This document shows, one piece after another, positions 11,961-64,000 of a DNA stretch of 64,000 bases (position 1 is its first letter; every line of letters begins with the position of its first letter). The notes under the pieces were generated by a model. It was not told the origin of the DNA. It saw only the letters and a program-made list of their open reading frames with translations, and did not search any database. The stretch is from Ranitomeya imitator (lineage: Eukaryota), in the NCBI RefSeq assembly GCF_032444005.1, contig NC_091289.1, forward strand, positions 123,256,001 through 123,320,000, given 5' to 3'. The position numbers and the translations under genes were made by a program.

Positions 11961-13384
11961 TTATTGACAACAAATATTAGTAACATTTAAAATATAACTG
12001 GTACAGACCCAAACCCAACAAGACATTTTATACAATATTGTCCTGCCATGCCACACGTCCAATATCAGAATAAAAAAGGCAGCAAATTGGTCCTGCATGT
12101 GGCCAACTTCAACAGTTGACCGCAGCGGGTGATGCTGGTAATCGGGCCATGGGTTTGCAACTTGTTCATCCAGTTCAATGTTGGGTCGCTCCCTAGCCAT
12201 AATGTAATTGTGGAGAACCACACAGGCTTTGACCACCTCATCGACTGTCTCCATTTTTAGATTAATGGCTGTTGCAAGAATGCACCATTTTGAGACTATA
12301 ATCCCAAAGGTACACTCTACTGTTCTTCGGGCCCTGGTCAGTCTGTAGTTAAAGATCCTTTTAGTGTGGTTCAAGTCCTGACTGGAATATGGCTTCAGTA
12401 GGTTTTCATACATCTGAAAGGCCTCATCCCCAACCATAACAAATGGCATCGTTGTGCCTTGTGTGTTGGGGAGAGGTCGTGGCCGTGGAAAATTAAAATT
12501 TTTGCCATAGACACGTCGGCCCATATCTGAGTTCTTGAAAGTCTGGGAATCGTTGCCATGGCCAAAAGCTCCAATGTCCACGGCGATGAAGCAACGGTCC
12601 GCATCTGCTATTGCCATGAGCACGACAGAAAAATATTTTTTGTAGTTGAAGTACTCCAATCCAATTCTGGCAAGTTTGATAATGCGTATGTGCTTTCCAT
12701 CCACCGCACCCATCACACACACTCCAGAATTTCTCTGCTATTCCCATTCACATGTCCTCAGTGGGTATGGGTATAAATTCATCCCGGAGAACATTCCACA
12801 AAACCCAGCAGGTGTCTGCAACTGTACCAGATAGGGTAGAAATTCTAAGCCGGTACTGGAAGTGGAGGGATGATAAGCTCTCTCCAGTTGCCAGAAATCT
12901 GTAATAAAATAAATAAAAAATAAATTACAATCAATTCTATTTATGGTGTTGTTCTAAAGACAAAAAGGAAAATACAAAGAATACATGTCAGACCAACAAT
13001 AATTATGATTGGCATTTGTTTAGAATTATTACGTACATTAATGTAACCAGTAGACGTTCCTCTGCAGGAATCGCTCTACGGTGCTGGGTGTCCTGTCTCC
13101 GGATGGCTCCTTGGACACGACAAAGCAAATCCCGAAATGAGTCTTGCGACATCCTGGAATATTCCGGGAATTTGTCCGGGTTGGCATTAAGCTCACCATA
13201 TAGCGTGTGATAGGCTCCACGGCTCTCCCGGAGTTTGATAATGAGGTGTCTCCAAAAACGCCGACGCCGTGCCTTCTCTGTTTTCTCGATTTCTTTGTTG
13301 CTCCCAAGCAAACGCACAGGCAAGAAACAGCTCGATGCTTAAATCCAGGTTGAAATAAAAGCTCTCCATGCGAAGATCCATCAT
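11961..13384 (-). pseudogene. Harbinger transposase (HARBI1-like, DDE_Tnp_4), 2 exons (13384-13037, 12898-11961)
   Basis: AIPAEERLLVTL|RFLATGESLSSLHFQYR...GAVDGKHIRI...GNDSQTF...VGDEAF...FNYRLTRARRTVECTFGI...ACVVLHN; intron 12899-13036 GT-AG; TGA in exon 2, loss of the FPNC segment and an exon 1 frameshift. Confidence 0.92.
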
Positions 13385-27504: not shown

Positions 27505-29445
27505 GGTCTCCAAGGACGGGAGGGATTGGGACATGTTATTGCCCTATCTGATGTTCGCTATCCGCGAGGTACCACAGGCTTCCACGAGTTTCTCTCCTTC
27601 TGAGCTATTGTATGGCAGGCATCCAAGGGGGTTGCTGGACGTAGCTAAGGTGACGTGAGAACAGGAGCCAACTCCGCATCGGAACGTAATTGAGCATGTA
27701 GCAAGCATGCAGGACCGGATTACAGCAGTCAGGCCAAGAGTGAAGGCGCATCTAATGGATCCCCAAGCTGCACAGAGCCACACATGTAATAAAAGAGCCA
27801 CAGTCATGACCAATAAAGAAGGGGACCTGGAGTTGGTACTAGTACCCACCACAGAGAGTAAACTCATGGCCAAGTGGCTAGGGCCATATGAGATTCGGGG
27901 AAAGGAGGGAGAAGTGAATCATAGAGTGATCCAGCCTAGAAAGAAAAAAACAGAACAACTATACCATTTGAACCTTATAAAAGCATGGAAGGACCGGGAA
28001 TGTTTCGTCACAGAGGGGACCCCAGTCATACCAACAGGGAGCCCTCTGTGAGGTGAGCCCTCTGTGAGGTTAAGATAAATGACGCTCTCACAAAACATCA
28101 GCGATGAGAGGCTCGAGTTTTGGTGCAACAGAATATGGACGTAATCTCAGAACTGCCAGGTCGGATATCGGTGGTCCAGCACGACATTGTCATTGAACCT
28201 CGGGTAAGGGTATGGATGAAACCGTATCGAGTGCCACAGGCACGGAGGCAAGCCATTGTGGCTGAAGTGAAGCAAATGCTCCAGTTATGAGTCATCGAGG
28301 AATGCCGGAGTGGGCTAGCCCCATTGCCCTAATTCTGAAGCCTGATGAGTCATTACACTTTAGTAATGACTTCAGGAAATTGAATGTGGTATCAAAGTTT
28401 GACCTCTGTCCAGTCCACCAGGGGGATGAGCTAATTGAGAGATTGGAGGAGGCCTGGTACTTCACCACGCTCGACCCAAAAGCTACTGGCAGGTCCCACA
28501 GAATCAGCAAAATAAAAGACCGCATTTATATGTTGTCATGCCGTTTGGATTACATGGGGCTCTGGCCACATTCCAGAGGCTGATGGACATAGTGTTAGAG
28601 CATCATCAGAACTACGCGTCGGCATATTTAGATTTCATAGTCATCTTTAGTACCAGCTGAAAAACCCACCTGTCCCTGGTACAAGCAGTGCTGGATTCTC
28701 TCAGAATCGCGGGGTTAACAGCGAACCCAAGAAAATGTGTGATAGGACTCACGGATGCCTGGTACTTAGGATACGTGATTGGCTGTGGGGTTATCAAACA
28801 CCAAATAAATAAGATTGAGGTCATCCAAAACTGGCCCAAACCTTTAAGCACAAAACAGGTGAGGGCATTCCTTGGCAACATTGGCTACTACCACCGGTTT
28901 ATACCCAATGTTGCTGAGAGATTGGCATCCCTAACCAACCTGTTAAAGGGTAAGAAGTCGGTTATGGTCTGGTGGAATACTCAAGCAGAGGAAGCATTCC
29001 AGTTCCTGAAGTCAAAGTTGTGTGAACAGCTGGTCCTCATCATCCCCAACTTCACAAAAACGTTTATCGTGCAAAGAGATGCCTCAGAGTTAGACCTAGG
29101 AGAGTTACTGTTACAAGAAATGACAGGGGATGAACATCCGATCACCTACTTGAGCAGGAAACTGACCCCGGACGAGAAAAATTATAACATAGTGGAGAAA
29201 GAGTGCTTTTCGATTAAGTGGGCCTTGGAATCCCTACGCTATTATTTGCTCGGGCATCAGTTTCATTTAGTAACGGACCATTCACCCCTGGTCTTGATGA
29301 GAAATGCAAAGGAAAGGAATACTTGGGTCACCAGATGGTTCCTGTCCCTACAAAACTTCAGTTTTTCAGTAAACATCGGGCAAGGAAATATGGATGCCCT
29401 GTTGCTGGCACCCTGTATGGTGGCCAATGTTCAACCCCACAAGTT
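27505..29445 (+). pseudogene. Gmr1-like integrase C-terminus, RT and RNase H
   Basis: KDGRDWDMLLPYLMFAIREVPQAST...; WASPIALILKPDESLHFSNDFRKLN; RDASELDLG...HPITYLSRKL...VTDHSPL; 16-bp tandem duplication at 28040-28071. Confidence 0.88.
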
Positions 29446-30160
29446 TGAACACCGGGGGATATGTGAGACAATGAGGGGATCATATGCGAGGGTCGATATG
29501 TATCCCGCAGGATGTGAATGGAAGCATATAAAAGCCACTGGTGTGCATTGCAGTCACGGAGATAGCTGTGGTTGCAGTGCAGACTAAAAGTAAGTTTGGT
29601 CTTGGACAAGCTTTTTGTTCAAGGCAGTTTTAAGAAAACCCAGCATGGGCTTTTATTTTTGGAGTGAACTACAGGATGGTAGTGGTGCAGTTCGCTCCCT
29701 CCAGCTAGGTCTTACAAGTGGCCCATAGCCACAGATTCCATTGAAAAACCCTGCAGCAAAGGTTTGGGTGTGTCAGTGTTTGTTTGCTAGCTGCAGGTGG
29801 CTTTACAACAGCCGGCTTGTGTGAGGTAACACAGAGCCAGAAAAGTGAACGCCTGGCGCCCCTCAGCGTGACACGGCGGTGCAGTCGCCCACGTCGATAG
29901 GTCTCGGATGCGGACTGCCTTGACACCCCGGCTGTGATATGGACGATACCACTTGCTTTCTATTTGTAAGTTGCTTTGGACATTGAAAATTTTGCTTTGA
30001 ATTTTTATGTGGTCCCTGCCTATCTGCTGCACTGCACCAACCCCACTGCACTACAATGTAAACAGAACTTACCCTGATGAGAACTCTGACAGCCTATGCT
30101 CACTGAACGATTTATTACAGATCGCTCAGTGTGCATTGTTTACTGTGGGCTGACTATGTA

Positions 30161-33861: not shown

Positions 33862-34325
33862 ACAGATTTCAGTTAGATCAAATTGGCATTTACAATCACC
33901 ATTTTTTGCCTAATTGGACAAAAAAGGGTCATATACTTGTACGTGTAATACACGGTTTTCAGTCTGAAAGGGCTAATTCACGTTATCACTTTATTATCTC
34001 AAGTGTTTAATTTAGCTAGAAATCAACAACTGGAGGATCAGAACTAGTGAGGGGTAGGTCACCATTCTGTTTAATTATTAGTGGCATAAAGACAAAGTTA
34101 TATATACTTCCCTCTAATAGAGATCTGTGAACCATTATCTTTCTTACCAGATGTAACATTCCCACAGTGACACTTGTACAGCTCATACAGAAGGACAGAA
34201 AGTCACAGAAATCTATGAAAATGATTCCGTCACAGAACTTAACTTTTCCTATAAATCAATAGGGTGATGATGATCATTACATATAGAAACCAAGAGACTT
34301 GCTTATTTTACATATATTACAATAA

Positions 34326-34963
34326 GACACAAAGGAGCACAGTGAGGTCAAAAATACTCTGTTGTAAAAAAATCACAGTAATAAGCAAGTGCTAGTCCAA
34401 AGATGGAAAAAAACAGGGTATTTAGTTGATACTTTTTTTTGCAAAAAAAGTATACTAAGCTGCTCCACCAAACGTCAAGGTATACCCATATAGAGCAGTC
34501 CTAACTAATGTATATAATCCCTATCTGATGTATTTAAAAACCTGATCATCTGTATAGTACCTGTATAAGCAGGGTTCAAAGAGGGAATATCCATGTGGAC
34601 CTGCTAGATGGAACAACTTTAGTGCAAATGACCCAGAAAGGAGTGGTGGACTCCCCAGTCTTGTAGAAACAAGAGAACAATTATAGAACCAGAAACACAT
34701 GGGCTACTTGCACATTGAACAAGTCTGTAGGAACATGCTCACACCACCAAGAAACTTGAAGACACAAAAGAGCACAGTGAGGTCAAAAATACTCTGTTGT
34801 AAAAAAAAAATCACAGTAATAAGCAAGGGCTAGTCAAAAGATGGAAAAAACAGGGTATTTAGTTGATACGTTTTTTTGCAAAAAAATGTATACTAAGCTG
34901 CTCCACCAATCGTCAAGGTATACCCATATAGAGCAGTCCTAACTAATGTATGTTTCTGGTTCT
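34326..34963 (-). mobile_element. TSD-flanked partial tandem (435-bp unit x~1.45) with a short terminal inversion
   Basis: 14-bp direct repeat ATATATTACAATAA at 34312-34325 and 34964-34977; unit restarts at 34759; 34951-34966 is the reverse complement of 34682-34697. Confidence 0.75.
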
Positions 34964-35579
34964 ATATATTACAATAATAATATCACACTTTGATATATAT
35001 TGGTATTTTATTATCAATCAGGGAAGGTTCAAACTCTGTATTCTTGCTTTGTCAATACGTATCAAGGACTTTGCATGGCCCCTATTTCTGCGAAAAAGAA
35101 AAGATCTGAACAAAACAGTTTAATGAAAAAGCAATTGTAGAACTACCTTTCTAGACAGGGCAGAAGGCCCCTCTTTTGTCATTCCATGTGCTCTGCAATG
35201 CAATCAGTTGTCCCCAAGCCTGCCAAAGACAGGGCTGAAATGATCTTTCCCAATGTCATTAATCATTAATTTTAAAATGAAATCAGCAAAATAAAAAAGA
35301 GTTGGAGAAGTCAGATACGTTAAGACTTTACATATTTGGAATGCTGCAAAAAATATAAAAAATGTTAGGATTTCCCTTTTTTGATAACTTTGTCTACCCC
35401 CAAAATCTGAAAAAGAAACATACAAATTTGTTATTTTTGCCTTACAGTGAAAAGCATTAAAACAAAACCAGTGCAATGTTGCTGGCATTGCAAGTTTTTC
35501 TCTTTTAATCCCACAGATATCCTTGTTTCTCTAGTCTGATGAAATCATCCTGATTTAAAACCTTCCCATACCTTATAAC

Positions 35580-36311
35580 TAGTGTTGAGCATTCCGATAC
35601 CGCAAGTATCGGGTATCGGCCGATACTTGCGGTATCGGAATTCCGATACCGAGATCCGATACTTTTGTGGTATCGGGTATCGGTATCGGATCAATAGGGA
35701 TGTGTAAAATAAAGAATTAAAATAAAAAATATTGATATGCTCACCTCTCTGGCGGCCCCTGGACATCACGCTGGCAACCGGCCGGCTTCTTTGTTTAAAA
35801 TGAGCGCGTTTACGACCTGCAAATGACGTCGCGGCTTCTGATTGGTCGCGTGCCGCTCATGTGACCGCCACGCGACCAATCAGAAGCCGCGACGTCATTC
35901 TCATTCACTAAACTCCTAATTCTAGGAATTAAGGACCTGCGAATGACGTTACGGCTTCTGATTGGTCGCGTGGCGGTCACATGAGCGGCACGCGACCAAT
36001 CAGAAGCCGCGACGTCATTCGCAGGTCCTAAACGCGCTCATTTTAAACAAAGAAGCCGGCCGGTTACCAGCGTGATGTCCAGGGGCCGCCGGAGAGGTGA
36101 GCATATCAATATTTTTTATTTTAATTCTTTATTTTACACCTCACTATGGATCCCAGGGCCTGAAGGAGAGTTTCCTCTCCTTCAGACCCTGGGAACCATC
36201 AGGATACATTCCGATACTTGATGTCCCATTGACTTGTATTGGTATCGGATATCGGTATCGGCGATATCCGATATTTTTCGGGTATAGGCCGATACTATCC
36301 GATACCGATAA
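35580..36311 (+). mobile_element. hAT-type palindromic MITE, right end truncated
   Basis: Same family as the complete copy at 60661-61424 (TAGTGTTGAGC terminus, GATACCG repeats, central palindrome). Confidence 0.85.
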
Positions 36312-43644: not shown

Positions 43645-46600
43645 TGTTGTGAATTCAGTTGTCGGGCTCCCTCCTGTGGTCATGAATGGTACTTCGGCTG
43701 GTTCTGTCCATGGACTTCCTCTGGTGGGTGTTTCTGAGTTTCCTTCCACAGGTGACGAGGTTAATTCGTTAGCTGGCTGCTCTATTTAACTCCACTTAGA
43801 TCTTTGCTCCATGCCACCTGTCAATGTTCCAGTATTGTTCTCTCCTGGATCGTTCTTGTGACCTGTCTTCCCAGCAGAAGCTAAGTTCCTGCTTGTATTT
43901 TCTTTGGTTTGCTATTTTTCTGTCCAGCTTGCTATTTTTATTGTTGCTTGCTGGAAGCTCTGGGACGCAGAGGGAGCGCCTCCACACCGTGAGTCGGTGT
44001 GGAGGGTCTTTTTGCGCCCTCTGCGTGGTCTTTTTGTAGGTTTTTGTGCTGACCACAAAGCAACCTTTCCTATCCTCAGTCTGTTCAGTAAGTCGGGCCT
44101 CACTTTGCTAAATCTATTTCATCTCTGTGTTTGTATTTTCATCTTTACTCACAGTCATTATATGTGGGGGGCTGCCTTTTCCTTTGGGGAATTTCTCTGA
44201 GGCAAGGTAGGCTTTATTTTTCTATCTTCAGGGCTAGCTAGTTCCTTAGGCTGTGCTGAGTTGCATAGGGAGCGTTAGGAGCAATCCACGGCTATTTCTA
44301 GTGTGTGTGATAGGATTAGGGATTGCGGTCAGCAGAGTTCCCACGTCCCAGAGCTCGTCATTTATTATCAGTAACTATCAGGTCATTCCGTGTGCTCTTA
44401 ACCACCAGGTCCATTATTGTCCTGACCACCAGGTCATAACAGTACATGTGGCCCAAAGTACTAATGCATCTCAATAGAGGGATAAGAGAAGTTCTGAGAC
44501 CATTTTTTTTTCTTTGCAGTGTGCTTTGTCTCTCTTTTCCCCTTTACCTCTGGGTGGTTCAGGACACAGGTGTAAACATGGACATTCAAGGTCTGTCCTC
44601 TTGGATGGATAATCTCACTACAAGGGTACAAAGCATTCAAGATTTTGTGGTTCAGAATCCGATGTCAGAACCTAGGATTCCAATTCCTGATTTGTTTTTT
44701 GGTGATAGATCTAAGTTCTTGAATTTCAAAAATAATTGTAAATTGTTTCTTGCCTTGAAACCTCGCTCCTCAGGTGACCCTGTTCAACAAGTAAAGATCA
44801 TTATTTCTTTGTTACGTGGTGACCCTCAAGACTGGGCATTTTCCCTTGCGCCAGGAGATCCGGCATTGCGTGATGTTGATGCGTTTTTCCTGGCGCTTGG
44901 ATTGCTTTATGACGAACCTAATTCAGTGGATCAGGCAGAGAAAATCTTGCTGGCTCTGTGTCAGGGTCAGGATGAAGCGGAGATATATTGTCAGAAGTTT
45001 AGAAAGTGGTCTGTGCTCACTCAGTGGAATGAATGTGCCCTGGCAGCAATCTTCAGAATGGGTCTCTCTGAAGCCCTTAAGGATGTCATGGTGGGATTTC
45101 CCATGCCTGCTGGTCTGAATGAGTCTATGTCTTTGGCCATTCAGATCGATCGACGCTTGCATGAGCGTAAAGCTGTGCACCATTTGGCGGTACTATCTGA
45201 GCATGGGCCTGAGCCTATGCAATGTGATAGGACTTTGACCAGAGCTGAACGGCAAGAACACAGACGTCGGAATGGGCTATGTTTTTACTGTGGTGATTCC
45301 ACTCATGTTATCTCCGATTGTCCTAAGCGCACTGAGCGGTTCGCTAGGTCTGCCACCATTGGTACGGTACAGTCTAAATTTCTATTGTCCGTTACTCTGA
45401 TTTGCTCTTTGTCATCCTATTCTGTTATGGCATTTGTGGATTCAGGCGCTGCCCTGAATTTCATGGACTTGGAGTATGCTAGGTGCTGTGGGTTTTTCTT
45501 GGAGCCCTTGCAGTATCCTACTCCATTGAGAGGAATTGATGCTACGCCTTTGGCCAAGAATAAGCCTCAGTACTGGACCCAATTGACCATGTGCATGGCT
45601 CCCGCACATCATGAGGATATACGCTTTCTGGTGTTGCATAATCTGCTTGATGTGGTCGTTTTGGGGTTGCCATGGCTACAGGTTCATAATCCAGTATTGG
45701 ACTGGAAATCTATGTCTGTGTCCAGCTGGGGTTGCCAGGGGGTACATGGTGATGTTCCATTTTTGTCTATTTCGTCTTCCACTCCTTCTGAAGTTCCAGA
45801 GTTTTTGTCGGATTATCGGGATGTATTTGATGAGCCCAAAGCCAGTGCCCTACCTCCTCATAGGGATTGCGATTGTGCAATTAATTTGATTCCTGGTAGT
45901 AAGTTTCCTAAGGGCCGATTGTTCAATTTATCTGTGCCAGAACACGCCGTTATGCGGAGTTATGTAAAGGAATCCTTGGAGAAAGGCCATATTCGCCCGT
46001 CGTCATCACCGTTAGGAGCAGGGTTCTTTTTTGTGGCCAAGAAGGATGGTTCTTTGAGACCTTGTATTGATTACCGCCTTCTTAATAAAATTACAGTCAA
46101 ATTTCAGTATCCTTCGCCGTTGCTGTCTGATTTGTTTGCTCCTATTAAAGGGGCTAGTTGGTTCACCAAGATAGATCTTCGAGGGGCATATAATCTTGTG
46201 CGTATTAAACAAGGCGATGAATGGAAAACAGCATTTAATACGCCCGAGGGCCATTTTGAGAACCTGGTTATGCCATTCGGGCTTTCCAATGCTCCATCAG
46301 TATTTCAGTCCTTTATGCATGACATCTTCCGAGAGTACCTGGATAAATTCCTGATTGTATACTTGGATGATATTTTGGTCTTTTCGGATGATTGGGAGTC
46401 TCATGTGAAGCAGGTCAGAATGGTGTTCCAGGTCCTTCTTGCGAATTCCTTGTTTGTGAAGGGGTCAAAGTGTCTCTTTGGAGTTCAGAAGGTTTCATTT
46501 TTGGGGTTCATTTTTTCCCCTTCTACTATCGAGATGGACCCTGTTAAAGTCCAGGCCATTTACGATTGGACTCAGCCGACAGCTGTGAAGAGCCTGCAAA

Positions 46601-49440
46601 AGTTCCTGGGCTTTGCTAATTTTTATCGGCGCTTCATCACTAATTTTTCTAGTGTTGCTAAACCATTGACTGATTTGACCAAAAAGGGTGCTGATGTGGT
46701 CAATTGGTCTTCTGCAGCTGTAGAGGCTTTTCAGGAGTTGAAGCGTCGTTTTTCTTGTGCCCCTGTGTTGTGCCAGCCAGATGTTTCGCTCCCGTTTCAG
46801 GTTGAAGTTGATGCTTCTGAGTTTGGAGCAGGGGCTGTTTTGTCGCAAGGAAGTTCTGATGGCTCGGTGATGAAGCCATGTGCTTTCTTTTCTAGAAAGT
46901 TTTCGCCTGCTGAGAGTAATTATGATGTTGGTAATCGAGAGTTGTTAGCCATGAAGTGGGCATTCGAGGAGTGGCGTCATTGGCTTGAAGGAGCCAAGCA
47001 TCGCGTGGTGGTCTTGACAGATCACAAGAATTTGACTTATCTTGAGTCTGCCAAACGGTTGAAGACAGGCTCGATGGTCGCTATTTTTCTCCCGTTTTGA
47101 TTTTGTGGTTTCATACCTTCCGGGCTCTAAGAATGTGAAGGCTGATGCCCTGTCAAGGAGTTTTGTGCCTAACTCTCTGGGTGTTCCTGAGCCGGCGGTT
47201 ATTCTCAAAGAGGGGGTAATTTTGTCTGCCATCTCCCCTGATTTGCGGCGGGTGCTGCAAAAATTTCAGGCTGATAGACCTGACCGTTGCCCAGCGGAGA
47301 AACTGTTTGTCCCTGATAGATGGACTAGTAGAGTTATCTCTGAGATTCATTGTTCAGTGTTGGCTGGGCATCCTGGAATCTTTGGTACCAGAGATTTGGT
47401 GGCTAGATCCTTTTGGTGGCCTTCTTTGTCACGGGATGTGCGTTCTTTTGTGCAGTCCTGTGGGGCTTGTGCTAGGGCTAAGCCCTGCTGTTCTCGTGCC
47501 AGTGGGTTGCTTTTGCCCTTGCCGGTCCCGAAGAGGCCCTGGACGCATATTTCTATGGATTTTATTTCAGATCTCCCCGTCTCTCAAAAGATGTCGGTCA
47601 TTTGGGTGGTTTGTGATCGCTTTTCTAAGATGGTCCATTTGGTACCTTTGTCTAAATTGCCTTCCTCCTCTGATTTGGTGCCATTATTTTTCCAGCATAT
47701 GGTTCGTTTACATGGTATCCCGGAGAACATCGTTTCTGACAGAGGTTCCCAGTTTGTTTCGAGGTTTTGGCGATCCTTTTGTGCTAGGATGGGCATTGAT
47801 TTGTCTTTTTCCTCGGCTTTCCATCCTCAGACAAATGGCCAAACCGAACGAACTAATCAAACTTTGGAAACATATCTGAGATGCTTTGTTTCTGCTGATC
47901 AGGATGATTGGGTGTCCTTTTTGCCGTTGGCTGAGTTCGCCCTTAATAATCGGGCCAGCTCGGCTACTTTGGTTTCGCCGTTTTTCTGCAATTCTGGTTT
48001 CCATCCTCGTTTCTCTTCAGGGCAGGTTGAGTCTTCGGACTGTCCTGGTGTAGATACTGTGGTGGATAGGTTGCAGCAGATTTGGACTCATGTGGTGGAC
48101 AATTTGACATTGTCCCAGGAGAAGGCTCAACGTTTCACTAACCGCCGGCGCTGTGTGGGTCCCCAACTTCGTGTTGGGGATTTGGTTTGGTTGTCGTCCC
48201 GTTATGTTCCTATGAAGGTTTCCTCTCCTAAGTTTAAGCCTCGTTTCATTGGTCCGTATAAGATTTCTGAGGTTATCAATCCTGTGTCATTTCGTTTGGC
48301 CCTTCCTGCTTCTTTTGCCATCCATAATGTGTTCCATAGGTCGTTATTGTGGAGATACGTGGCGCCTGTGGTTCCATCCGTTGATCCTCCTGCCCCGGTG
48401 TTGGTTGAGGGGGAGTTGGAGTATGTGGTGGAGAAGATTTTGGATTCTCGTATTTCAAGACGGAAACTCCAGTACCTGGTCAAGTGGAAGGGTTATGGTC
48501 AGGAAGATAATTCCTGGGTTTTTACCTCTGATGTTCATGCTGCCGATCTGGTTTGTGCCTTTCATTTGGCTCATCCTGGTCGGCCTGGGGGCTCTGGTGA
48601 GGGTTTGGTGACCCCTCCTCAAGGGGGGGTACTGTTGTGAATTCTGTTGTCGGGCTCCCTCCTGTGGTCATGAATGGTACTTCGGCTGGTTCTGTCCATG
48701 GACTTCCTCTGGTGGGTGTTTCTGAGTTTCCTTCCACTGGTGACGAGGTTAATTCGTTAGCTGGCTGCTCTATTTAACTCCACTTTGATCTTTGCTCCAT
48801 GCCACCTGTCAATGTTCCAGTATTGGTCTAGTTCTCTCCTGGATCGTTTTTGTGACCTGTCTTCCCAGCAGAAGCTAAGTTCCTGCTTGTATTTTCTTTG
48901 GTTTGCTATTTTTCTGTCCAGCTTGCTATTTTTATTGTTGTCTTGCTTGCTGGAAGCTCTGGGACGCAGAGGGAGCGCCTCCGCACCGTGAGTCGGTGCG
49001 GAGGGTCTTTTTGCGCCCTCTGCGTGGTCTTTTTGTAGGTTTTTGTGCTGACCGCAAAGCAACCTTTCCTATCCTCAGTCTGTTCAGTAAGTCGGGTCTC
49101 ACTTTGCTAAATCTATTTCATCTCTGTGTTTGTATTTTCATCTTTACTCACAGTCATTATATGTGGGGGGCTGCCTTTTCCTTTGGGGAATTTCTCTGAG
49201 GCAAGGTAGGCTTTATTTTTCTATCTTCAGGGCTAGCTAGTTCCTTAAGCTGTGCCGAGTTGCATAGGGAGCGTTAGGAGCAATCCACGGCTATTTCTAG
49301 TGTGTGTGATAGGATTAGGGATTGCGGTCAGCAGAGTTCCCACGTCCCAGAGCTCGTCCTTTATTATCAGTAACTATCAGGTCATTCCGTGTGCTCTTAA
49401 CCACCAGGTCCATTATTGTCCTGATCACCAGGTCATAACA
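43645..49440 (+). mobile_element. Full-length sushi/Tf1-type chromoviral Gypsy element (element 2, sister subfamily of element 1)
   Basis: LTRs 43645-44441 and 48633-49440; GAGAGG duplicated on both sides; 7-G PPT. Confidence 0.97.
44578..48640 (+). pseudogene. Gag-Pol with chromodomain; frameshift from a 5-bp deletion at ~47062
   Basis: TTGAAGACAGG vs TTGAATCCTAGACAGG in element 1; ORFs 44446-47100 and 47105-48640 carry all domains. Confidence 0.95.
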
Positions 49441-52238: not shown

Positions 52239-55200
52239 TGTTAGGAGTCGAGTTTCCTCTGCTGCACAGGGGGAATCTTGATCCATGTCTGCTGCGGTCT
52301 CCCATTCTGCATCGGCCGCAGTGGAGCCTGCTCAGCGGAGACGTCGCTCCCAGCATCTCGCTGAGACTGATACGGTGCAAAGGGTTACTACTGCCTCTCC
52401 AGGCTCTGCTATTGTACCCTGCACTGATCTGCAGCGAACGGGCTTTTCTGGGACTAAGTCCTGCTTTGCACACACTGAGCATGCCCAGGGCAAGATCTCT
52501 CAGTGGAGATCTAGGGTCACATGCTCAGGTACTGCAGCAACTTCCATTGGTCCTTCTTGGAAGGTCTTATAGGTGCTAGGACTAAGTTCTGCTTTGCACA
52601 CACTGAGCATGCCCTGGGCAAGATCTCTCAGTGGAGATCTAGGGTCACATGCTCAGGTACTGCTGCAACTCCATTGGTCCTTCTTTGAAAGGTCCTGAAC
52701 GTGCTGCAGCTATATAAGCTTCGCATGACCACACGGCCATGTGCTAGTATACTTTTGTAAACGTGTGTGTGTGTGTTGTGAGTGAAAGTCGTTCTTTAAA
52801 ATCCCCTCCCTATTGTATGACTGCTCGTGGAAGGTGGATGATTGCTATCTACGCCCGACTTAGCCATCAGCACGTAACACACAATACAGTGTCTTATTGC
52901 TGTGACCGCCAGTGCGGCGCCGTGCGCTTTCACAGCACTTTCCTGACCCAAGCCTGGGTGGTTAGTGGCGTCCGCCAGTGCGACACCGCACGCACTCTCG
53001 TGCATCTTTATTATTATTATTTCTGTCACTCTGACACCCCAGTTGCGGTGTCGAGCGCATGAGCTCTATATGAACTCAAATCCTGTGTCTTGGGATTGAG
53101 TTCTGAGACTCCTTGCTTGCGCTCTTGGTGCGGTACTGCGGCCCTGTGACGCAACAGGGTTCGCTTCCTTCACACAGGGTGAAGTAAACCCGTGTGTGTA
53201 TTCACATTGTACCACCATATAGTGCCGCCATTTACTTAGCAGCAGGTTCTTTCCTGCACGGTGGATCCCGGGTGGCGAACGCACCAATCTTACTTAATAA
53301 ATATATTCGGTGCGATCCGCCAACCCTAACATTATACTAACACCAGGATCTGGCTAAGTAAAGGCGGATGAACAGTGATTGCAAGGGTACATCCAGCTGA
53401 TGGAGGTGCAGTTGGCGGTGGATGTTACCGCAATTGCTGTTCAGGCTGCTAGCATGGCTACAGCAGCTTTAACCACTGCCACCCCTGTTCCGACTCTATC
53501 TCACCTCCCTTTGCCTGAGAAATACTCTGGGAACAGTAAGTCCTGTAGGGGTTTCGTGAGCCAGTGTAGTATACACCTCGAGCTCCTGGCTGCACGTTTT
53601 CCCACAAAGGTGGGATTCATAATATCTCTCTTGTCGGACAGGGCGTTGGAGTGGGCTACGCCACTGTGGGAGCGTAACGATCATGTGGTGCGGAGTGTTC
53701 CTCGGTTTCTGGACACTCTGAAACAGGTCTTTGTAGGACCTCAAGTCACCCATGATACAGCGCTCCAACTGCTGGCTTTGACTCAGGGTTCAACCATTGT
53801 CAGCCATTTTGCTGTTCACTTCCGGACCTTAGCGTCTGAGTTGGAATGGCCAGACAAAACCCTCGTTCCCGTATTTTGGAGGGGGCTGGCTGACCATGTG
53901 AAGGAAGCTTTGGCTACTAGGGAGATTCCCGCCACACAGGAGGAGCTCATAGCTGTATCAACTCGCATAGACCTTCGTTTTCACGAGCGAAGGTTGGAGC
54001 GAGCCCAGTGTAGGCAGAGGTTTTGGCTGGCTCCCACCTTCGCCAAACCTTTGGAATCTCCAGTCCAGGCATCTGAGTCACATAATGTTTGTCATGCTTG
54101 CCGGCAGTCATGACATCTTGCCTCCAAGTGTCCTCAGCAGTCGGGGAAACGTCAGCGTCTAGTGGCAGTAGGAGGAGGTACACTAGACACGGCGACGTTT
54201 GCCTCAAAGTTGTCCTTCAAGGGGACAATTACCATAGGCCCATCCACTCTTATGGTAGAGCTATGCGCGGATTCAGGAGCGGAGGGTAATTTTATGTCAT
54301 CCGCTTTCGCCCAGCGTCACGCAATACCCCTGGTGATGCTCACCAAACCAGTAACCGTTCGAGTGGTAAATGGGTCGACACTACCCTCACAGATTACCCA
54401 CCAAACCATTCCTATCACGCTTTCTGTGTCTCCATCACATCAGGAGATTATCTCCCTATTAGTCATTCCTGAGGGAATTGATGAGGTCCTGTTAGGGATA
54501 CCATGGCTGCGCTATCATTTTCCTCATATAGAGTCGTCCTCAGGGAGAATTTTGGGATGGAGTAAATCCTGCGAGGGTAGATGTCAGAGGGAGTGCGTTC
54601 AGGTTGCTACAACACAGGTACCCGCAGATCTTTCCTCTCTCCCCAAGCACTATTGGCCCTATGCAGACGTGTTCTCCAAAAGGGCTGCGGAGACTCTTCC
54701 ACCTCACCGCCCGTATGACTGTCCTATTGACCTCTTGCCTGGTGCTGAGCCTCCCTGGGGTCGAGTCTATCCGTTATCTCTCCCGGAGATGGAGGCAATG
54801 TCTCAGTACATCCAAGAGAATCTGGCTAGTGGATTCATTAGGAAGTCAGTGTCACCTGCAGGGGCTGCGTTCTTCGTACAGAAGAAGACTGGAGACTTAC
54901 GTCCATGCATAGACTACAGGGGTCTTAACGCCATCACCGTTAAGAACAAGTACCCATTACCCCTGATATCTGAACTTTTTGATAGGCTACGGGGAGCAAG
55001 GGTATTTACAAAATTAGATCTGCGGGGTGCCTACAACCTGATTCGCATCCGTGAGGGGGATAAATGGAAGACGGCTTTTAACACCAGGGAAGGGCACTAT
55101 GAATATCTGGTGATGCCATTCGGGCTCTGTAATGCCCCAGCTGTTTTCCAAGACTTTGTGAACGACATCTTCCGGGATATGCTCACCAACTCGGTCGTAG

Positions 55201-57210
55201 TCTATCTGGATGATATTCTCATCTACTCTCCAGATATTGACTCCCATCGGAGAGATGTTCACAAAGTCTTCGACCTCTTACGGGCAAACTCCCTCTACGC
55301 CAAGTTGGAGAAGTGTGTGTTTGAGCAGGAGTCCTTGCCTTTCCTTGGTTATATCATCTCTGCCCAGGGTTTGGCTATGGATCCTGCCAAGCTACAGGCT
55401 GTGATGGACTGGCAGGAACCCCATTCTCTTAAAGCAGTGCAGTGCTTTATGGGGTTCATTAATTACTCTCGCCAGTTCATTCCACACTTCTCAACTTTGG
55501 TGGCTCCCTTGGTTGCCCTCACCAAGAAGGGAGCAAATTCCAAGTTGTGGTCAGAGGAGGTCTCCAAAGCCTTTCTCTCGATTAAGTCACACTTCGCTAG
55601 CGCTCCCATCCTGCATCGCCCCGATGTAGATAAACCATTTATCATGGAGGTGGATGCCTCATCCGTTGGTGCTGGAGCAGTCCTTTTCCAAAAGGATGCT
55701 CAAGGTCGGAAGCATCCTTGCTTCTTCTTCTCCAAGACCTTCACACCAGCAGAGAGGAATTATTCCATCGGGGACAGGGAGTTGCTAGCCATGAAGTTGG
55801 CTTTTTCTGAGTGGAGAAACCTCTTGGAGGGAGCTCGCTTTCCCTTCCAAGTGTTCACTGACCACAAGAACTTGGTATATACAGTATACAGACGGCCCAG
55901 CGGCTGAATTCTCGCCAGGCTAGATGGTCCCTGTTCTTCTCCCGGTTCCATGTTACTCTCCATTTTCTCTCCGGGGAGAAGAACATTCGTTCTGACGCTC
56001 TCTCCCGCTCCGTAGTGTCATCTGAGGAGGAGGAGCCTCGGCTTATTGTCCCTTCTGAGAGCCTGAGAACTGTGGCTCCGGTTTCGCTAGAGTCCGTGCC
56101 CCCGGGCAAGACTTTCGTACCAGCGAATTTGCGACCAGAGGTTCTCTCTTGGGCTCACTCGTCCACAGTGGGTGGACATTTTGGGACCAAGAGGACATCT
56201 GAGCTTTTGGCGAGGACGTACTGGTGGCCGCATATGGCCCGTGACGTCGGGGACTATATTTCAAGCGTGTGTCTCCTCCGCCCAGAATCGGTCTCCTCAG
56301 CAACGGCCTGCTGGTTCACTTTACCCCATGCCGGTGGCAGACAGGCCCTGGGAGATGGTCAGGATGGACTTCGTGGTGGGCTTTCCCAAGTCTCATAGCT
56401 GCACCATTATCTGGGTAGTCACCGATCATTTTTCTAAGATGGTGCATTTGGTGCCGCTTCCACGGTTACCTTCTGCACGGGCCGGGCCTTGGCGGTGTTT
56501 TTCATAAAACATATTTTCCGTTTACATGGAATGCCTGATAAAATTGTCAGCGACCGGGGTCCCCAGTTTGCGTCTCGGTTTTGGAGAGAGCTCTGCCGTT
56601 TACTCAGCATAGAGCTGAATCTCTCCTCTGCATATCATCCCGAGACGAATGGGTTGGTAGAGAGAACCAACCAGACTCTGGTGACATACTTGCAACATTT
56701 TGTCTCTGCTAGGCAGGATGACTGGGCATCTTTGCTACCTTGGGCGGAATTTGCATTGAACAACGCCGTAGCCGATTCCACTGGTCAGACTCCTTTTCTC
56801 CTTAATTACGGCCAGCATCTGCGTGTCCCTGTGCCCATGCCCGTGTCATCCACCGATTCTAGGGTGGCAGACTGGGCGGTGGAGGCATGTGATATCTGGG
56901 ACCACACACAGGATGCCATCTGGGCCTCCAAGGAGAGAATGAGGGTATGAGCTGATACACACCAGCGCCCCGCTCCGACCATTACTCCTGGCAACTTAGT
57001 GTGGCTCTCTGCCCATAACATCAGGCTTCGAGTTGAGTCAACTAAGTTTGCGCCTCGCTACATTGGCCCGTTCAAGGTTCTGGAACAGGTCAACCCTGTG
57101 GTCTACCGTTTGGCTATTCCTCCACGCCTTGGTATCACCGTTACTTATCACGTTTCCCTCTTAAAGCCCGTTCATTTGTCCCGGTTTTCTGAGTCATCTG
57201 CCGGGACGTC
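52239..57210 (+). mobile_element. Sushi-type Gypsy element 3 (different family), 3'-truncated
   Basis: 5' LTR 52239-53331 (TG...CA); gag LPLPEKYSGN; CHAC..HLASKC with TGA; ADSG protease; YLDD; RNase H; frameshifted integrase; no chromodomain or 3' LTR. Confidence 0.92.
53379..57200 (+). pseudogene. Gag-Pol of element 3 (RTL/PEG10-related gag)
   Basis: ORFs 53379-54113 and 54162-55907 share one frame across a TGA; integrase split over 56015-57200. Confidence 0.9.
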
Positions 57211-60660: not shown

Positions 60661-61424
60661 TAGTGTTGAGCATTCCGATACCGCAAGTATCGGGTATCGG
60701 CCGATATTTGCGGTATCGGAATTCCGATACCGAGATCCGATATTTTTGTGATATCGGGTATCGGTATCGAATCAATAGGGATGTGTAAAATAAAGAATTA
60801 AAATAAAAAATATTGATATGCTCACCTCTCCGGCGGCCCCTGGACTTCACGCTGCTATCCGGGAGGCTTCTTTGTTTAAAAAGCGCGCCTTTCGGACCTG
60901 TGAATGACGTCCCGGCTTCTGATTGGTCGCGTGCCGCCCATGTGACCGGCACGCGACCAATCAGAGGCTGCGACGTCATTCGCAGGTCCTCAATTCCTAG
61001 AATTAGCAGTTTTGTGAATGAGAATGACGTCGCGGCTTCTGATTGGCCGCGTGCCGGTCACATGGGCGGCACGCGACCAATCAGAAGCCGGGACGTCATT
61101 CACAGGTCCGAAAGGCGCGCTTTTTAAACAAAGAAGCCTCCCAGATAGCAGCGTGAAGTCCAGGGGCCGCCGGACAGGTGAGCATATCAATATTTTTTAT
61201 TTTAATTCTTTATTTTACACATCCCTATGGATCCCAGGGCCTGAAGGAGACTTTCCTCTCCTTCAGACCCTGGGAACCATGAGAATACCTTCCGATACTT
61301 GATGTCCCATTGACTTGTATTGGTATCGGATATCGGTATCGGCGATATCCGATATTTTTCGGGTATCGGCCGATACTATCCGATACCGATACTTTCAAGT
61401 ATCGGACGGTATCGCTCAACACTA
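60661..61424. mobile_element. Complete hAT-type palindromic MITE
   Basis: TIR TAGTGTTGAGC; 8-bp TSD ATTATGAT at 60653-60660 and 61425-61432. Confidence 0.92.
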
Positions 61425-61731
61425 ATTATGATTAATACAGACTGGCTGACTGTACAGAAATATTTCTACAAAAACATTAGAAAACTAGAACACAATTGGT
61501 GACATGTTAGTTGGATATTGGATATAATTTTGATTTAGTTAAACATTAAAGAGTTTGTCCACTACTTTGATAACCCGATCTTAAATGCTGTAGTCATCGG
61601 TGTAAAATTAGAAAGACTTGGGGTAAATAAAAATGATAAAGGGTACACAGATGTCTTTCCAACTTTGATGACTCCAAGTGTAAAGGAAATTTCATAGGTG
61701 ATAATTTGCTTGAACCCAAATACACCTTGAA

Positions 61732-62651
61732 AGGGAACCTGTCACCCCCCTGGCATTTGTAACTAAAAGAGCCACCTTGTGCAGCACTAATGCTGCATTC
61801 TCATGAGCAAGAGAAAAAAGATAGACTAATTGGGGTAGGCACAACTACAAATATATAAAGATCAAAAAATCCTTTATTATCACCTCACAAAATACCATAA
61901 ATGCATTTAAAATACATGAAAAAAAACATGTATTTTAAATGCTTTTATGGTATTTTGTGAGGTGATAATAAAGGATTTTTTGATATTTATATATTTGTGG
62001 TTGTGCCTACCCCAATTAGTCTATCTTTTTTCTCTTGCTCATGTATTTGCTATGTATAGACTAGGTGGAGCACACCCCCTTCTTCTTTTCATTTATTTTC
62101 CCAATTAGTGCACCCCTTCTTGCATATATATATACTAATGCTGCATTCTGACAAGGTGGCTCTTTTAGTTGTTCAAGTCCCTGGCACTGCTGTGATAATC
62201 GCTTTTGAAATTTGTCCCTCATACCAGTGAAATCGTCCGGGGGCAGGTCTTTCCCCCTAATCCAGACGCCTCACATCCGTCAATGATGGCCTCTGCGCGC
62301 CGGGCGCCGCCTCCTGTTCCTTCAGTAGCGTCCCCGGTGCGTTCAAAGGGCAGCGCAACTGCGCATGCCCGAAAAAAAGATAACAGTGCAGGCACCGGGG
62401 ACGCTACTGAAGGAAGAGGAGGCGGAGCCCGGCGCGCAGAGGCCATCATTGACGGATGTGAGGCGTCTGGATTAGGGGGAAAGACCTGCCCCCGGACGAT
62501 TTCACAGGTATGAGGGACAAATTTCAAAAGCGATTATCGCAGCAGTGCCAGGGACCCGAACTAAAAGAGCCACTTTGTCAGAAAATGCAGCATTAGTGCT
62601 GCACAAGGTGGCTCTTTTAGTTACAAACGCCAGGGGGGTGACAGGTCCCCT
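61732..62651. mobile_element. Kolobok/T2-type palindromic MITE with a nested insertion
   Basis: AGGGAACCTGTCACCCCCC / GGGGGGTGACAGGTCCCCT; TGAA/TTAA flanks; arms pair along the whole length around a ~60 bp spacer. Confidence 0.85.
61802..62133 (+). mobile_element. TSD-flanked fold-back insertion (Penelope-like architecture, non-coding)
   Basis: 16-bp duplication ACTAATGCTGCATTCT at 61786-61801 and 62134-62149; palindrome 61802-62043; 90-bp tail. Confidence 0.8.
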
Positions 62652-63164
62652 TTAAGCTATTTATTTTAATGAGTTGCCCATTACTGGGACAACACTTTTT
62701 TTTTGAATGCCTTTGTTTCACAGGTAAAACCCTTTAAATTAAGTCACCTACAGAGCTATTTGGGTTTAAGCACATTTTCATCAAATTCTCATTATACTTG
62801 GAGTCTTAGAAGCTGGAAATACATCAGTGCATTCCATTAGAATCCAGGTATTCAACTTAGATTTTAAGTGTAAAATTGGAGGTGAGTTTGTGGTATATTA
62901 CATTTATGTACTGCTATTGTAACTTTTATGTTAGTGTGGGTCCAACATTTGGGACCCTACTGTTTATCAAAATTTGGACTCTATGTCCCACATTATCCCC
63001 ATCTGTGCTTTACTTATTCTTTGACATTCCCACAGACTTTGATTGAAAATGCAAAGGAGCATGTGTGACCAACATTCCACTCAATTACTAGGGGCTGAGA
63101 TCTTGTAACTCAACTGTCAAATCCATGCCAATATACCAGTCACAGGATCAGTGATAATATGTTT

Positions 63165-63493
63165 TTTTTTTTTTTTTTTTTTTAAACCAATCAAATTTTT
63201 ATTGTAGAAAAGCTTTACAATTATAACATAGAGAAAAACAGGGAAAGGGGAATTAAGAGGGGAATACCACCATTGATAATTTACAGAAGTGTGGTAACAA
63301 TAGTAATACCTGAGATTCGCATGAGTACATTATTATAAACAGCATTAAACATAAGGCAATACTTCTAACTTGAAGGCCTAGGCAGGAGAGCGCTGGGTAA
63401 TGACATCAGAGGAGAGGTAATCCAAGGATCCCACCAGGTGAGGACCTTATTCTTTTTGGAAAGGGAGCCAGCAGTGATCAGTTCATAGCCTAA
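63165..63493 (-). mobile_element. 5'-truncated L1/Tx1-like retroposon (ORF2 C-terminus, 3' UTR, poly-A)
   Basis: 16-bp TSD CAGTGATAATATGTTT (63149-63164 and 63494-63509); poly-T on +; AATAAA on -; YELITAGSLSKKNKVLTWWDPW resembles L1 ORF2 ends. Confidence 0.85.
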
Positions 63494-64000
63494 CAGTGAT
63501 AATATGTTTAAAGCGACCAATTTGTTTTTTTTTCACTTGAAAAAGACATTAGTGCAACGTTCAAACGCATTGTAGAAATTAAAACCGTTCAACTCATTTT
63601 GTTCCTAAGGATTCTTTATTACATTATTATTATTGACCGATATCGTGTTATCATCCAAATTGGTCAACTATCCTGGAGATCATCCCCCAGCCACGAGGCA
63701 GCAGCACCTGATATCTTCAGGTGTTCAAAGGAGTTGTACCTGCATACAACCTGCTCAGATAAGCACCTTCCTTTTGCTTTCCTTTGCAGCTAGCAGGATA
63801 TCACCCATTAGTCTTGTGTGCTTTTGTTGTACTACAGTTTTTCTAGCAATATGTATAAACTGTGATACCTCTTTAAAGGGATGTATTATTTTAGTTGCAA
63901 AAGTTCTGGTTATACTTTAAAAAAATGTGGGCTATATGTCCAGCAAATATGGTGAAAGACTTTCCTGCCATGTACTTATTTGAATATAACTTGGTGCTGT

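What the first reader, a model, noticed from the sequence alone, without database searches (positions are those of the whole stretch)
61786..62149. 242-bp palindrome plus tail inserted in a MITE arm, with a built-in empty-site control
Arms of 117 bp differ at 3 positions around an 8-A loop. The right arm carries AATAAA, then a 90-bp tail ending in (TA)n. The opposite arm of the host Kolobok MITE (~62583-62609) shows the 16-bp target (one mismatch) as a single copy, which confirms a real TSD. A 16-bp TSD does not fit known DNA-transposon MITEs.
Basis: seen in the sequence. Interest (0 to 1): 0.7.

Follow-up and report, generated by a model that had tools for sequence, protein, structure and literature searches.

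The report
Retroposon insertion with folded-back 5' end
A 207-bp non-coding repeat was copied into a frog-type MITE through an RNA intermediate, and an inverted copy of its first 117 bases was added at its head during integration; this is a clean example of a known kind of retroposon insertion accident, not a new kind of mobile element.

Summary
There are two 117-nt arms with 3 mismatches, an A8 spacer, a 90-bp tail ending in (AT)5, and a perfect 16-bp duplication (61786-61801 and 62134-62149). The host is a TTAA/AGGRR (T2/Kolobok-type) MITE.

The empty site is seen in the MITE's other arm and in about 70-100 paralogous MITE contigs in each of four public runs.

The new result is that other genomic copies, in two coded organisms, match only 61927-~62132. 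Three contigs stop at 61927/8 and then continue with unrelated sequence. The repeat family is therefore a ~207-bp unit. Its canonical 5' end is exactly the palindrome axis, and the left arm is private to this copy.

The unit has no poly(A), tRNA head, hammerhead or TIRs, and the nick sites are not L1-like.

Best reading (confidence 0.6): target-primed reverse transcription in which both nicked ends were extended on a plus-sense RNA. One started at the (AU)n 3' end and the other at nt 117. Both reached the RNA 5' end and were joined through about 8 untemplated A. This head-to-head repeat with a one-sided tail resembles Penelope-like element insertions. Membership is unproven.

Unchecked notes of this scan report similar fold-back insertions with 14-15-bp TSDs elsewhere in this genome.

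Interest is modest.

The parts
61732..62651 (.). Host element: a palindromic T2/Kolobok-type MITE, about 572 bp before the insertion. Its target TTAA is intact at 62652-62655 and reads TTGAA at 61727-61731.
   Evidence: Inverted repeats I1, I3, I6. AGGRR termini and TTAA read. Thousands of paralogous contigs. Family definition in PMC6004289.
61786..61801 (+). Left copy of the 16-bp target-site duplication ACTAATGCTGCATTCT. It contains the 11-bp palindrome AATGCTGCATT (61789-61799).
   Evidence: (D6).
61802..61918 (-). Left arm: an inverted copy of nt 1-117 of the 207-bp unit, private to this copy. Inferred to be cDNA primed from the top-strand nick.
   Evidence: 97.4% complementary to 61927-62043. 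Three other genomic copies stop at 61927/8 and run on unlike this sequence (records 9, 25, 26).
61919..61926 (+). A8 spacer at the head-to-head junction. Not palindromic and not shared by other copies. Inferred to be untemplated addition.
   Evidence: Alignments of other copies end at 61927/8. R2 RT adds mostly A, up to 7 nt (PMC8857657).
61927..62133 (+). Full-length unit of a dispersed ~207-bp non-coding repeat family (right arm plus tail). The plus strand is inferred to be the RNA sense.
   Evidence: record 9 matches 61927-62132 inside a 401-nt contig, with 53 and 141 nt of unlike sequence on its two sides. Other pieces match 61928-62121, 61953-62118, 61995-62131 and 62029-62131. The family is present in organisms A and B.
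62044..62133 (+). One-sided 90-bp 'tail': unit nt 118-207, ending in (AT)5 at 62124-62133. It is absent from the inverted arm.
   Evidence: Other copies extend to 62129-62132, or to 62118-62121.
62134..62149 (+). Right copy of the 16-bp target-site duplication.
62580..62597 (-). Unoccupied equivalent of the target in the other arm of the same MITE. It is a single copy with two extra T.
   Evidence: (I3, I17).

Best explanation
The insert is one retroposition event of a short (~207-bp), non-coding, poly(A)-less repeat. Its canonical unit is 61927-62133, with the plus strand as RNA sense.

The target, inside a T2/Kolobok MITE, was nicked on both strands 16 bp apart. The bottom strand was nicked left of 61786 and the top strand right of 61801, which leaves two 3' ends that overlap by the future TSD.

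The bottom-strand 3' end primed reverse transcription at the (AU)n 3' end of the RNA and copied all 207 nt. The top-strand 3' end primed at an internal place (nt 117), without homology to the target. It copied back to the RNA 5' end, received about 8 untemplated A, and then continued on the first cDNA.

The result is a head-to-head palindrome whose axis is the RNA 5' end, plus a one-sided 90-bp tail, which is the stretch between the two start sites. The whole is flanked by a 16-bp TSD.

This is how Penelope-like elements (PLEs) are reported to insert, so the enzyme was most likely supplied by a PLE or another non-L1 retroelement.

Shown: the anatomy, the TSD, the empty sites, the family unit and its ends, and the lack of L1, SINE, hammerhead and TIR features. 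Inferred: the RNA intermediate, the strand, the order of events and the enzyme.
For: 1. Perfect 16-bp TSD with multiple empty sites.

2. Other copies equal 61927-~62132 only. Three independent contigs end at 61927/8 and go on for 53, 118 and 269 nt of unlike sequence (records 9, 26, 25). The axis therefore coincides, to within 1 nt, with the family's canonical end, and the arm's outer end coincides with the TSD. Two such coincidences are expected if the palindrome arose during integration. They would have roughly 1% odds each if it arose later at a random place.

3. The arms are 97.4% alike, while other copies are about 80-95% like this one. Both arms share minority letters (61977 T and 62015 A against majority C and T, table 3), so they came from one template.

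4. Both nick-primed strands require a plus-sense template. No simple TPRT scheme works for minus sense.

5. A8 lies on the strand where untemplated A would be added to the top-strand cDNA (PMC8857657).

6. There is no homology between the primers and the start sites. The literature reports that the anole Poseidon protein nicks and extends both strands, starts at two internal sites not homologous to the target, and that the tail is the stretch between them (PMC11167929). It also reports head-to-head inverted pLTRs with a one-sided tail and a TSD (PMC3846280; PMC8557442).

7. The nick sites TAGT/GCTG and TTCT/GACA are unlike L1's. A classic poly(A) retrocopy 1 kb away sits at GTTT/AAAG.
Against: - There is no hammerhead even at E<=10 and no partial tandem (pLTR) in this copy.
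- The tail is 90 bp, against 30-40 bp in PLEs.
- No similarity to any autonomous element could be tested, because no Repbase/Dfam library or whole genome was on hand.
- The minus strand is the A-rich one (45% A).
- Contig depth is higher over 61940-62040 than over the tail. That would fit 5' truncation of a minus-sense element, although the tool itself warns that such depth is not a copy number.
- An RNA intermediate is not shown directly.
- Using nt 1-117 of the template twice needs strand displacement or a second RNA molecule.
- Only about ten contig pieces define the family ends.
Confidence: 0.6

Rival explanations
1. Snap-back variant of the same retroposition. Only the bottom-strand nick primed. 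The first cDNA reached the RNA 5' end, was extended by 8 nt, folded back on itself and copied 117 nt of its own sequence before being joined to the upstream target end.
For: It explains the axis at the RNA 5' end, the one-sided tail and the near-identity of the arms with a single template and a single polymerase run. Self-priming has been proposed for palindromes at PLE inverted junctions (PMC3846280). The unit starts with the self-complementary CATG.
Against: The spacer would have to be T8 added to the cDNA. The one non-LTR RT characterised for this adds mainly A (PMC8857657). A 3' T-run has no obvious partner that would give arms starting exactly at both sides of the spacer.
Confidence: 0.17
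2. L1-type twin priming of a trans-mobilised RNA. An L1-like LINE supplied the enzyme, and the inverted arm comes from internal priming by the second nick.
For: L1 TSDs peak at 14-16 bp, and 5' inversions are explained by twin priming (PMC2912911). An L1-type poly(A) retrocopy with a 16-bp TSD lies at 63149-63509, so such machinery has acted in this genome.
Against: There is no poly(A); the 3' end is (AT)5. Neither nick site resembles TTTT/AA. There is no microhomology at the internal priming site. Twin priming normally gives adjacent segments, not segments overlapping by 117 nt. 5'-inverted SINE copies are rare (0.84% for SVA).
Confidence: 0.08
3. The whole 332-bp palindrome-plus-tail is the mobile unit: a fold-back subfamily, or a copy transcribed from a pre-existing rearranged source. 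The plain copies are relatives or truncations.
For: Some contigs lie on the inner 60 nt of the left arm (depth 11-103 in bins 61860-61919). Short-word assemblies collapse palindromes, so palindromic copies could be under-seen.
Against: Three contigs pass the 61927/8 end into unlike sequence. Depth is zero over 61840-61859 in all four runs. There is no second copy in the window.
Confidence: 0.07
4. A plain 207-bp insertion was later rearranged at the DNA level (fold-back repair or replication template switch), or the palindrome is an assembly artefact.
For: No public contig seen here spans the axis or the left junction. Palindromes can arise by fold-back repair. All three arm mismatches appear to be derived on the left arm (tentative, table 3).
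Against: The arm fills exactly the space between the intact left TSD and the unit's first base. The three mismatches, the asymmetric A8 and the clean junctions are not what a chimeric-read artefact gives.
Confidence: 0.06

Closest known systems
Penelope-like element (PLE) insertions: inverted pLTR + direct pLTR with an optional one-sided 'tail', flanked by a TSD
   Same: Shared features are a head-to-head inverted repeat, an extension present at only one outer end, a TSD, start sites not homologous to the target, and a junction with a palindrome (PMC3846280, PMC8557442, PMC11167929).
   Different: This copy has no hammerhead ribozyme and no partial tandem. Its tail is 90 bp rather than 30-40 bp. 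Its TSD is 16 bp, against 8-10 bp in the rotifer examples. No sequence link to a PLE was shown. Most copies of the family seen here are plain units.
L1 5' inversion by twin priming (human L1, rare Alu/SVA cases)
   Same: Both have a long TSD (L1 peak 14-16 bp), an inverted 5' segment made by priming from the second nick, and variable 5' structure on a fixed 3' end (PMC2912911).
   Different: This copy has no poly(A) and no TTTT/AA target. The inverted segment fully duplicates the direct one (117 nt) instead of adjoining it. There are eight extra nucleotides at the inversion junction, whereas such extras are reported as rare in 5'-inverted L1.
Animal non-LTR retrozymes / solo-pLTR insertions
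   Same: Both are short non-coding retro-inserted units in a PLE-bearing vertebrate genome. The bioRxiv preprint 10.64898/2026.07.22.740005 links retrozymes to PLE pLTRs.
   Different: Retrozymes are defined by hammerheads and tandem arrangement, and neither is present here.
T2-MITE / Kolobok non-autonomous DNA transposons (the host element)
   Same: The host element has a TTAA target, an AGGRR terminus, a palindromic body and very high copy number.
   Different: This comparison applies only to the host. The inserted unit has no TIRs and a 16-bp TSD.

Membership tests
DNA-transposon MITE | Terminal inverted repeats at the ends of the mobile unit | tested here: not met
   The unit ends CATGTATTTT... 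and ...CTTGC(AT)5 are not inverted repeats. The palindrome is private to this copy.
DNA-transposon MITE | Short TSD of fixed length (2-11 bp in known superfamilies) | tested here: not met
   The TSD is 16 bp and perfect. The length range for known superfamilies is from established knowledge.
L1-mobilised SINE or retrocopy | 3' poly(A) or A-rich tail next to the TSD | tested here: not met
   The 3' end is GC(AT)5. The neighbouring insert at 63149-63509 shows what the poly(A) type looks like in this window.
L1-mobilised SINE or retrocopy | Insertion at a TTTT/AA-like endonuclease site | tested here: not met
   The nick sites are TAGT/GCTG and TTCT/GACA.
L1-mobilised SINE or retrocopy | TSD of about 7-20 bp | tested here: met
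   The TSD is 16 bp. The L1 peak is 14-16 bp (PMC2912911).
Pol III SINE (tRNA, 5S or 7SL head) | Head derived from a small RNA gene with an internal promoter | tested here: not met
   ARAGORN found nothing. Rfam gave no tRNA, 5S or 7SL match even at E<=10. The plus strand has seven runs of T>=4.
Penelope-like element or PLE-derived non-autonomous insert | Head-to-head inverted repeat with an extension (tail) at one outer end only, flanked by a TSD | tested here: met
   However, the tail is 90 bp rather than 30-40 bp.
Penelope-like element or PLE-derived non-autonomous insert | Hammerhead ribozyme motif in the pLTR (Penelope/Poseidon and Neptune clades) | tested here: not met
   No hammerhead family was found in 61000-63400 at E<=1, in the unit at E<=10, or in the whole window at gathering score.
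Penelope-like element or PLE-derived non-autonomous insert | Partial tandem arrangement (pseudo-LTR) | tested here: not met
   There is a single direct unit and no tandem copy.
Penelope-like element or PLE-derived non-autonomous insert | Sequence similarity of the unit to the pLTR or 3' region of an autonomous PLE (RT + GIY-YIG) in the same genome | not testable with these tools
   No eukaryotic repeat library or whole genome was on hand. The window holds only Ty3/gypsy and Harbinger ORFs.
T2-MITE / Kolobok (host element) | TTAA target and AGGRR terminal motif | tested here: met
   The right end reads TTAA|AGGGG and the left end TTGAA|AGGGA. The paralogue consensus reads ...CTT before AAAGGG. 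The definition is in PMC6004289.

The most novel reading that the evidence does not exclude
The 207-bp family may be a hammerhead-less, SINE-like non-autonomous partner of frog Penelope-like elements. In that case this copy would be an in vivo snapshot of the mechanism so far seen only in vitro: both target strands nicked and extended, from two defined RNA start sites (here nt 207 and nt 117). It would show that PLEs mobilise short RNAs that lack both the ribozyme and the tandem organisation.
Probability: 0.2. Interest if true: 0.55.

Novelty: new member of a known kind. Interest (0 to 1): 0.3.

Why it matters
The locus is an unusually legible record of one integration event. It has an intact TSD and an internal empty-site control. 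The template's 5' end is marked by the palindrome axis, and the junction filler points to which strand was extended last.

If a genome-wide survey shows that inverted arms in this family start at one fixed internal coordinate, it would give natural evidence for two-strand priming by a PLE-type enzyme, and for a class of ribozyme-free PLE passengers.

If the survey does not show this, the locus is an ordinary 5'-rearranged retroposon copy. Its practical value would then be limited to repeat annotation: the 207-bp unit, not the 332-bp palindrome, is the family consensus.

Tried and rejected
- **In-window search for further copies** (blastn, word size 9). Nothing was found beyond the locus itself.
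- **Metagenome scan with a conserved 20-mer.** Four contigs matched, but over only 24 bp, so these are chance hits.
- **Rfam.** Only sub-threshold generic hairpin (miRNA-model) hits turned up, caused by the palindromes. There was no hammerhead, tRNA, 5S or 7SL match.
- **ARAGORN.** Nothing.
- **RNA fold of the unit.** Not more stable than shuffles (z = -1.07).
- **Argument that the minus strand is the sense strand because it lacks Pol III terminators.** Rejected, because 69% of composition-matched shuffles also lack TTTT.
- **AATAAA as a polyadenylation signal.** Rejected, because it lies about 160 nt from the element's end and there is no A-tail.
- **Tail-to-tail reading** (left arm + A8 as a poly(A)-tailed truncated copy). 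Rejected, because no nick-primed scheme puts the A-run at the centre.
- **Depth in the contig table as a copy-number profile.** Not used as evidence, because the tool warns against it.
- **The search of earlier findings by sequence.** It returned nothing, which per the operators means nothing.

Full report
**Observation**

- A 332-bp insert (61802-62133) lies between two perfect copies of ACTAATGCTGCATTCT (61786-61801 and 62134-62149).
- The insert has a 117-nt left arm (61802-61918), an A8 spacer (61919-61926), a 117-nt right arm (61927-62043) and a 90-nt tail (62044-62133).
- The right arm differs from the reverse complement of the left arm at three places (61846/61999, 61860/61985, 61902/61943).
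- The tail ends in (AT)5.
- The insert is 30% G+C.

**Host element**

The insert sits in a long palindromic element, about 61732-62651.
- Its right end reads TTAA|AGGGG and its left end reads TTGAA|AGGGA.
- Paralogous copies number in the thousands of contigs in each of four public runs. Their consensus puts ...CTT before AAAGGG.
- A TTAA target plus an AGGRR terminus defines the Xenopus T2-MITE family, which is attributed to Kolobok (PMC6004289).
- The genome is therefore most likely a pipid frog. The run organisms are coded, so this is an inference.

**Empty sites**

- The other arm of the same MITE carries the target once (62580-62597, read in reverse complement). It has two extra T relative to the TSD.
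- In each run, 71-103 contigs pass from 61801 directly into G(T/A)CAAGGTGGCTC, the sequence that here follows 62149.
- In each run, 32-54 contigs pass from ...CCACCTTGTGCAGC directly into 62134.
- Several contigs show joints skipping 340-383 nt (tables 5 and 7).

The insertion and its 16-bp duplication are therefore real features of this MITE copy.

**What the inserted thing is**

No second copy lies in the window. The public contigs of two coded organisms (A: X1 and X2; B: X3 and X4) hold relatives at about 80-95% identity. These relatives match only the right arm plus the tail.
- The best piece covers 61927-62132 inside a 401-nt contig. That contig continues for 53 nt beyond 61927 and 141 nt beyond 62132 with unrelated sequence (record 9).
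- Two further contigs stop at 61927 and 61928 and continue for 269 and 118 nt (records 25 and 26).
- At the other end, pieces stop at 62129-62132, or at 62118-62121 (table 8).

The repeat family is therefore a unit of about 207 bp with sharp ends. One of those ends is the palindrome axis, to within one base.

The left arm is not a family feature in those copies. It is also closer to the right arm (97.4%) than any other copy is. Both arms share letters that are in the minority in the family: 61977 T and 62015 A (table 3). The left arm is therefore a copy of the same template molecule.

As far as the shown rows of table 3 go, the right arm carries the family-majority letter at all three mismatched places. 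This point is tentative.

**What the unit is not**

- It has no terminal inverted repeats.
- It has no tRNA, 5S or 7SL head.
- It has no hammerhead ribozyme.
- It has no poly(A).
- Its fold is no more stable than that of shuffles.
- Its plus strand is 45% T, with seven runs of T>=4. The minus strand has none, but 69% of shuffles of the minus strand have none either, so this says nothing about strand.

**Mechanism**

A 16-bp TSD with this geometry is the signature of target-primed reverse transcription. The nick on the bottom strand lies at the left edge of the duplicated segment, and the nick on the top strand lies at its right edge. This leaves two 3' ends that both point into the insert.

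The strand grown from the right nick begins with the complement of ...GC(AU)5. The strand grown from the left nick begins with the complement of ...CUCUUGCUCAUG (unit nt 106-117). Both require a plus-sense template, and both run to unit nt 1.

The simplest account is that both nicked ends were extended on plus-sense RNA. One started at the 3' end and the other at nt 117. Each reached the RNA 5' end, and they were then joined head to head.

The spacer is A8 on the top strand. That is the strand and polarity expected if the top-strand cDNA received untemplated nucleotides at the end of the template. The Bombyx R2 RT adds mainly A, with up to 7 nt detected (PMC8857657).

Neither start site shows complementarity to its primer.

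Two coincidences point to an origin during integration rather than a later rearrangement. The axis falls on the family's 5' end, and the arm's outer end falls on the TSD boundary.

**Comparison with known systems**

The architecture of a head-to-head inverted repeat, an extension at one outer end only, and a TSD is the published hallmark of Penelope-like element insertions.
- A rotifer Pen2a copy has an inverted pLTR next to the direct one, a 31-bp one-sided tail and a 9-bp TSD. Palindromes occur at the inverted junctions (PMC3846280).
- The same scheme is drawn for Naiad and Penelope elements (PMC8557442).
- In vitro, the anole Poseidon protein nicks and extends both strands. It starts reverse transcription at two internal RNA sites that are not homologous to the target. 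The tail corresponds to the stretch between those sites (PMC11167929).

The present insert works like that, but membership is not established.
- It has no hammerhead and no partial tandem.
- Its tail is 90 bp instead of 30-40 bp.
- No comparison with an autonomous PLE was possible.

L1-type twin priming (PMC2912911) shares the long TSD and the inverted 5' piece. It fails on the poly(A) tail, on the nick-site sequence and on the 117-nt overlap of the two segments.

A textbook L1-type event lies 1 kb downstream, at 63149-63509. It has a 16-bp TSD, a T19-20 head (poly(A) on the minus strand) and a GTTT/AAAG site. This shows the contrast within the same window. It also shows that TSD length alone does not tell the two machineries apart.

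A snap-back of the first cDNA is a close variant of the favoured account. It would need T8 rather than A8 as the untemplated addition.

**Other leads**

A second insert in the window (34326-34963) has a 14-bp TSD, 1.45 tandem copies of a 435-438-bp unit and a 16-nt inverted internal piece at one end. It has no poly(A) and no hammerhead. That is the same style of complex, long-TSD retro-insertion.

Unchecked first-reader notes of this scan describe, elsewhere in this genome, recurrent small fold-back inserts with 14-15-bp TSDs and hammerheads, read as pLTR-only PLE insertions. I could not test those notes. I use them only as a lead that the phenomenon is frequent in this genome.

**Limits**

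- Only contigs, not reads, were available.
- No listed contig spans the axis or the left junction, so the left arm rests on this assembly alone.
- About ten contig pieces define the family ends.
- The RNA intermediate, the sense strand, the order of events and the enzyme are all inferred.
- The metagenome scan gave only chance matches.

**Verdict**

The object is a 5'-rearranged copy of a 207-bp poly(A)-less retroposon. It has a PLE-like insertion architecture. This makes it a new member of a known kind, of modest interest.

Noticed in passing
window 63149-63509: A classic minus-strand poly(A) retrocopy. The 16-bp TSD CAGTGATAATATGTTT (63149-63164 and 63494-63509) flanks a ~329-bp insert that begins with T19-20. 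The inferred nick site is GTTT/AAAG, which is L1-like. It serves as a useful contrast to the finding.
   Followed up: partly
window 34312-34977: An insert with a 14-bp TSD (ATATATTACAATAA). It holds 1.45 tandem copies of a 435-438-bp unit and a 16-nt inverted internal piece at its right end (34951-34966, the reverse complement of 34682-34697). It has no poly(A) and no hammerhead at E<=10. This is the partial-tandem plus small-inversion style seen in PLE-type or template-jumping retro-insertions.
   Followed up: partly
window 22606-26859, 28688-29587, 44446-48640, 53379-55907: Several Ty3/gypsy chromovirus-type retrotransposon ORFs (gag, protease, RT, RNase H, integrase, chromodomain). The window is a nest of transposable elements.
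   Followed up: no
window 11961-12722 (minus strand): An ORF with a PIF/Harbinger-type DDE_Tnp_4 transposase domain (E = 1.4e-23).
   Followed up: no
window 61019-61104, also 35832-35900 and 60947: A 38-nt-arm palindrome (CGGCACGCGACCAATCAGAAGCCG...) whose motif recurs as 120-bp-spaced direct repeats elsewhere in the window. It is probably another short repeat family.
   Followed up: no
window 61786-61801: The target of the insertion contains an 11-bp perfect palindrome, AATGCTGCATT. The two nicks lie 7 and 8 nt from its centre, which is nearly symmetric, as a dimeric nuclease would cut. This could also be chance in a palindrome-rich MITE.
   Followed up: partly
L001-L004 (metagenome contigs Ga0105044, Ga0105045, Ga0105048 and Ga0105049): Four contigs from one sample series share a 24-bp match with unit nt 22-45 and nothing more. 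This is a chance hit in an unrelated organism.
   Followed up: yes
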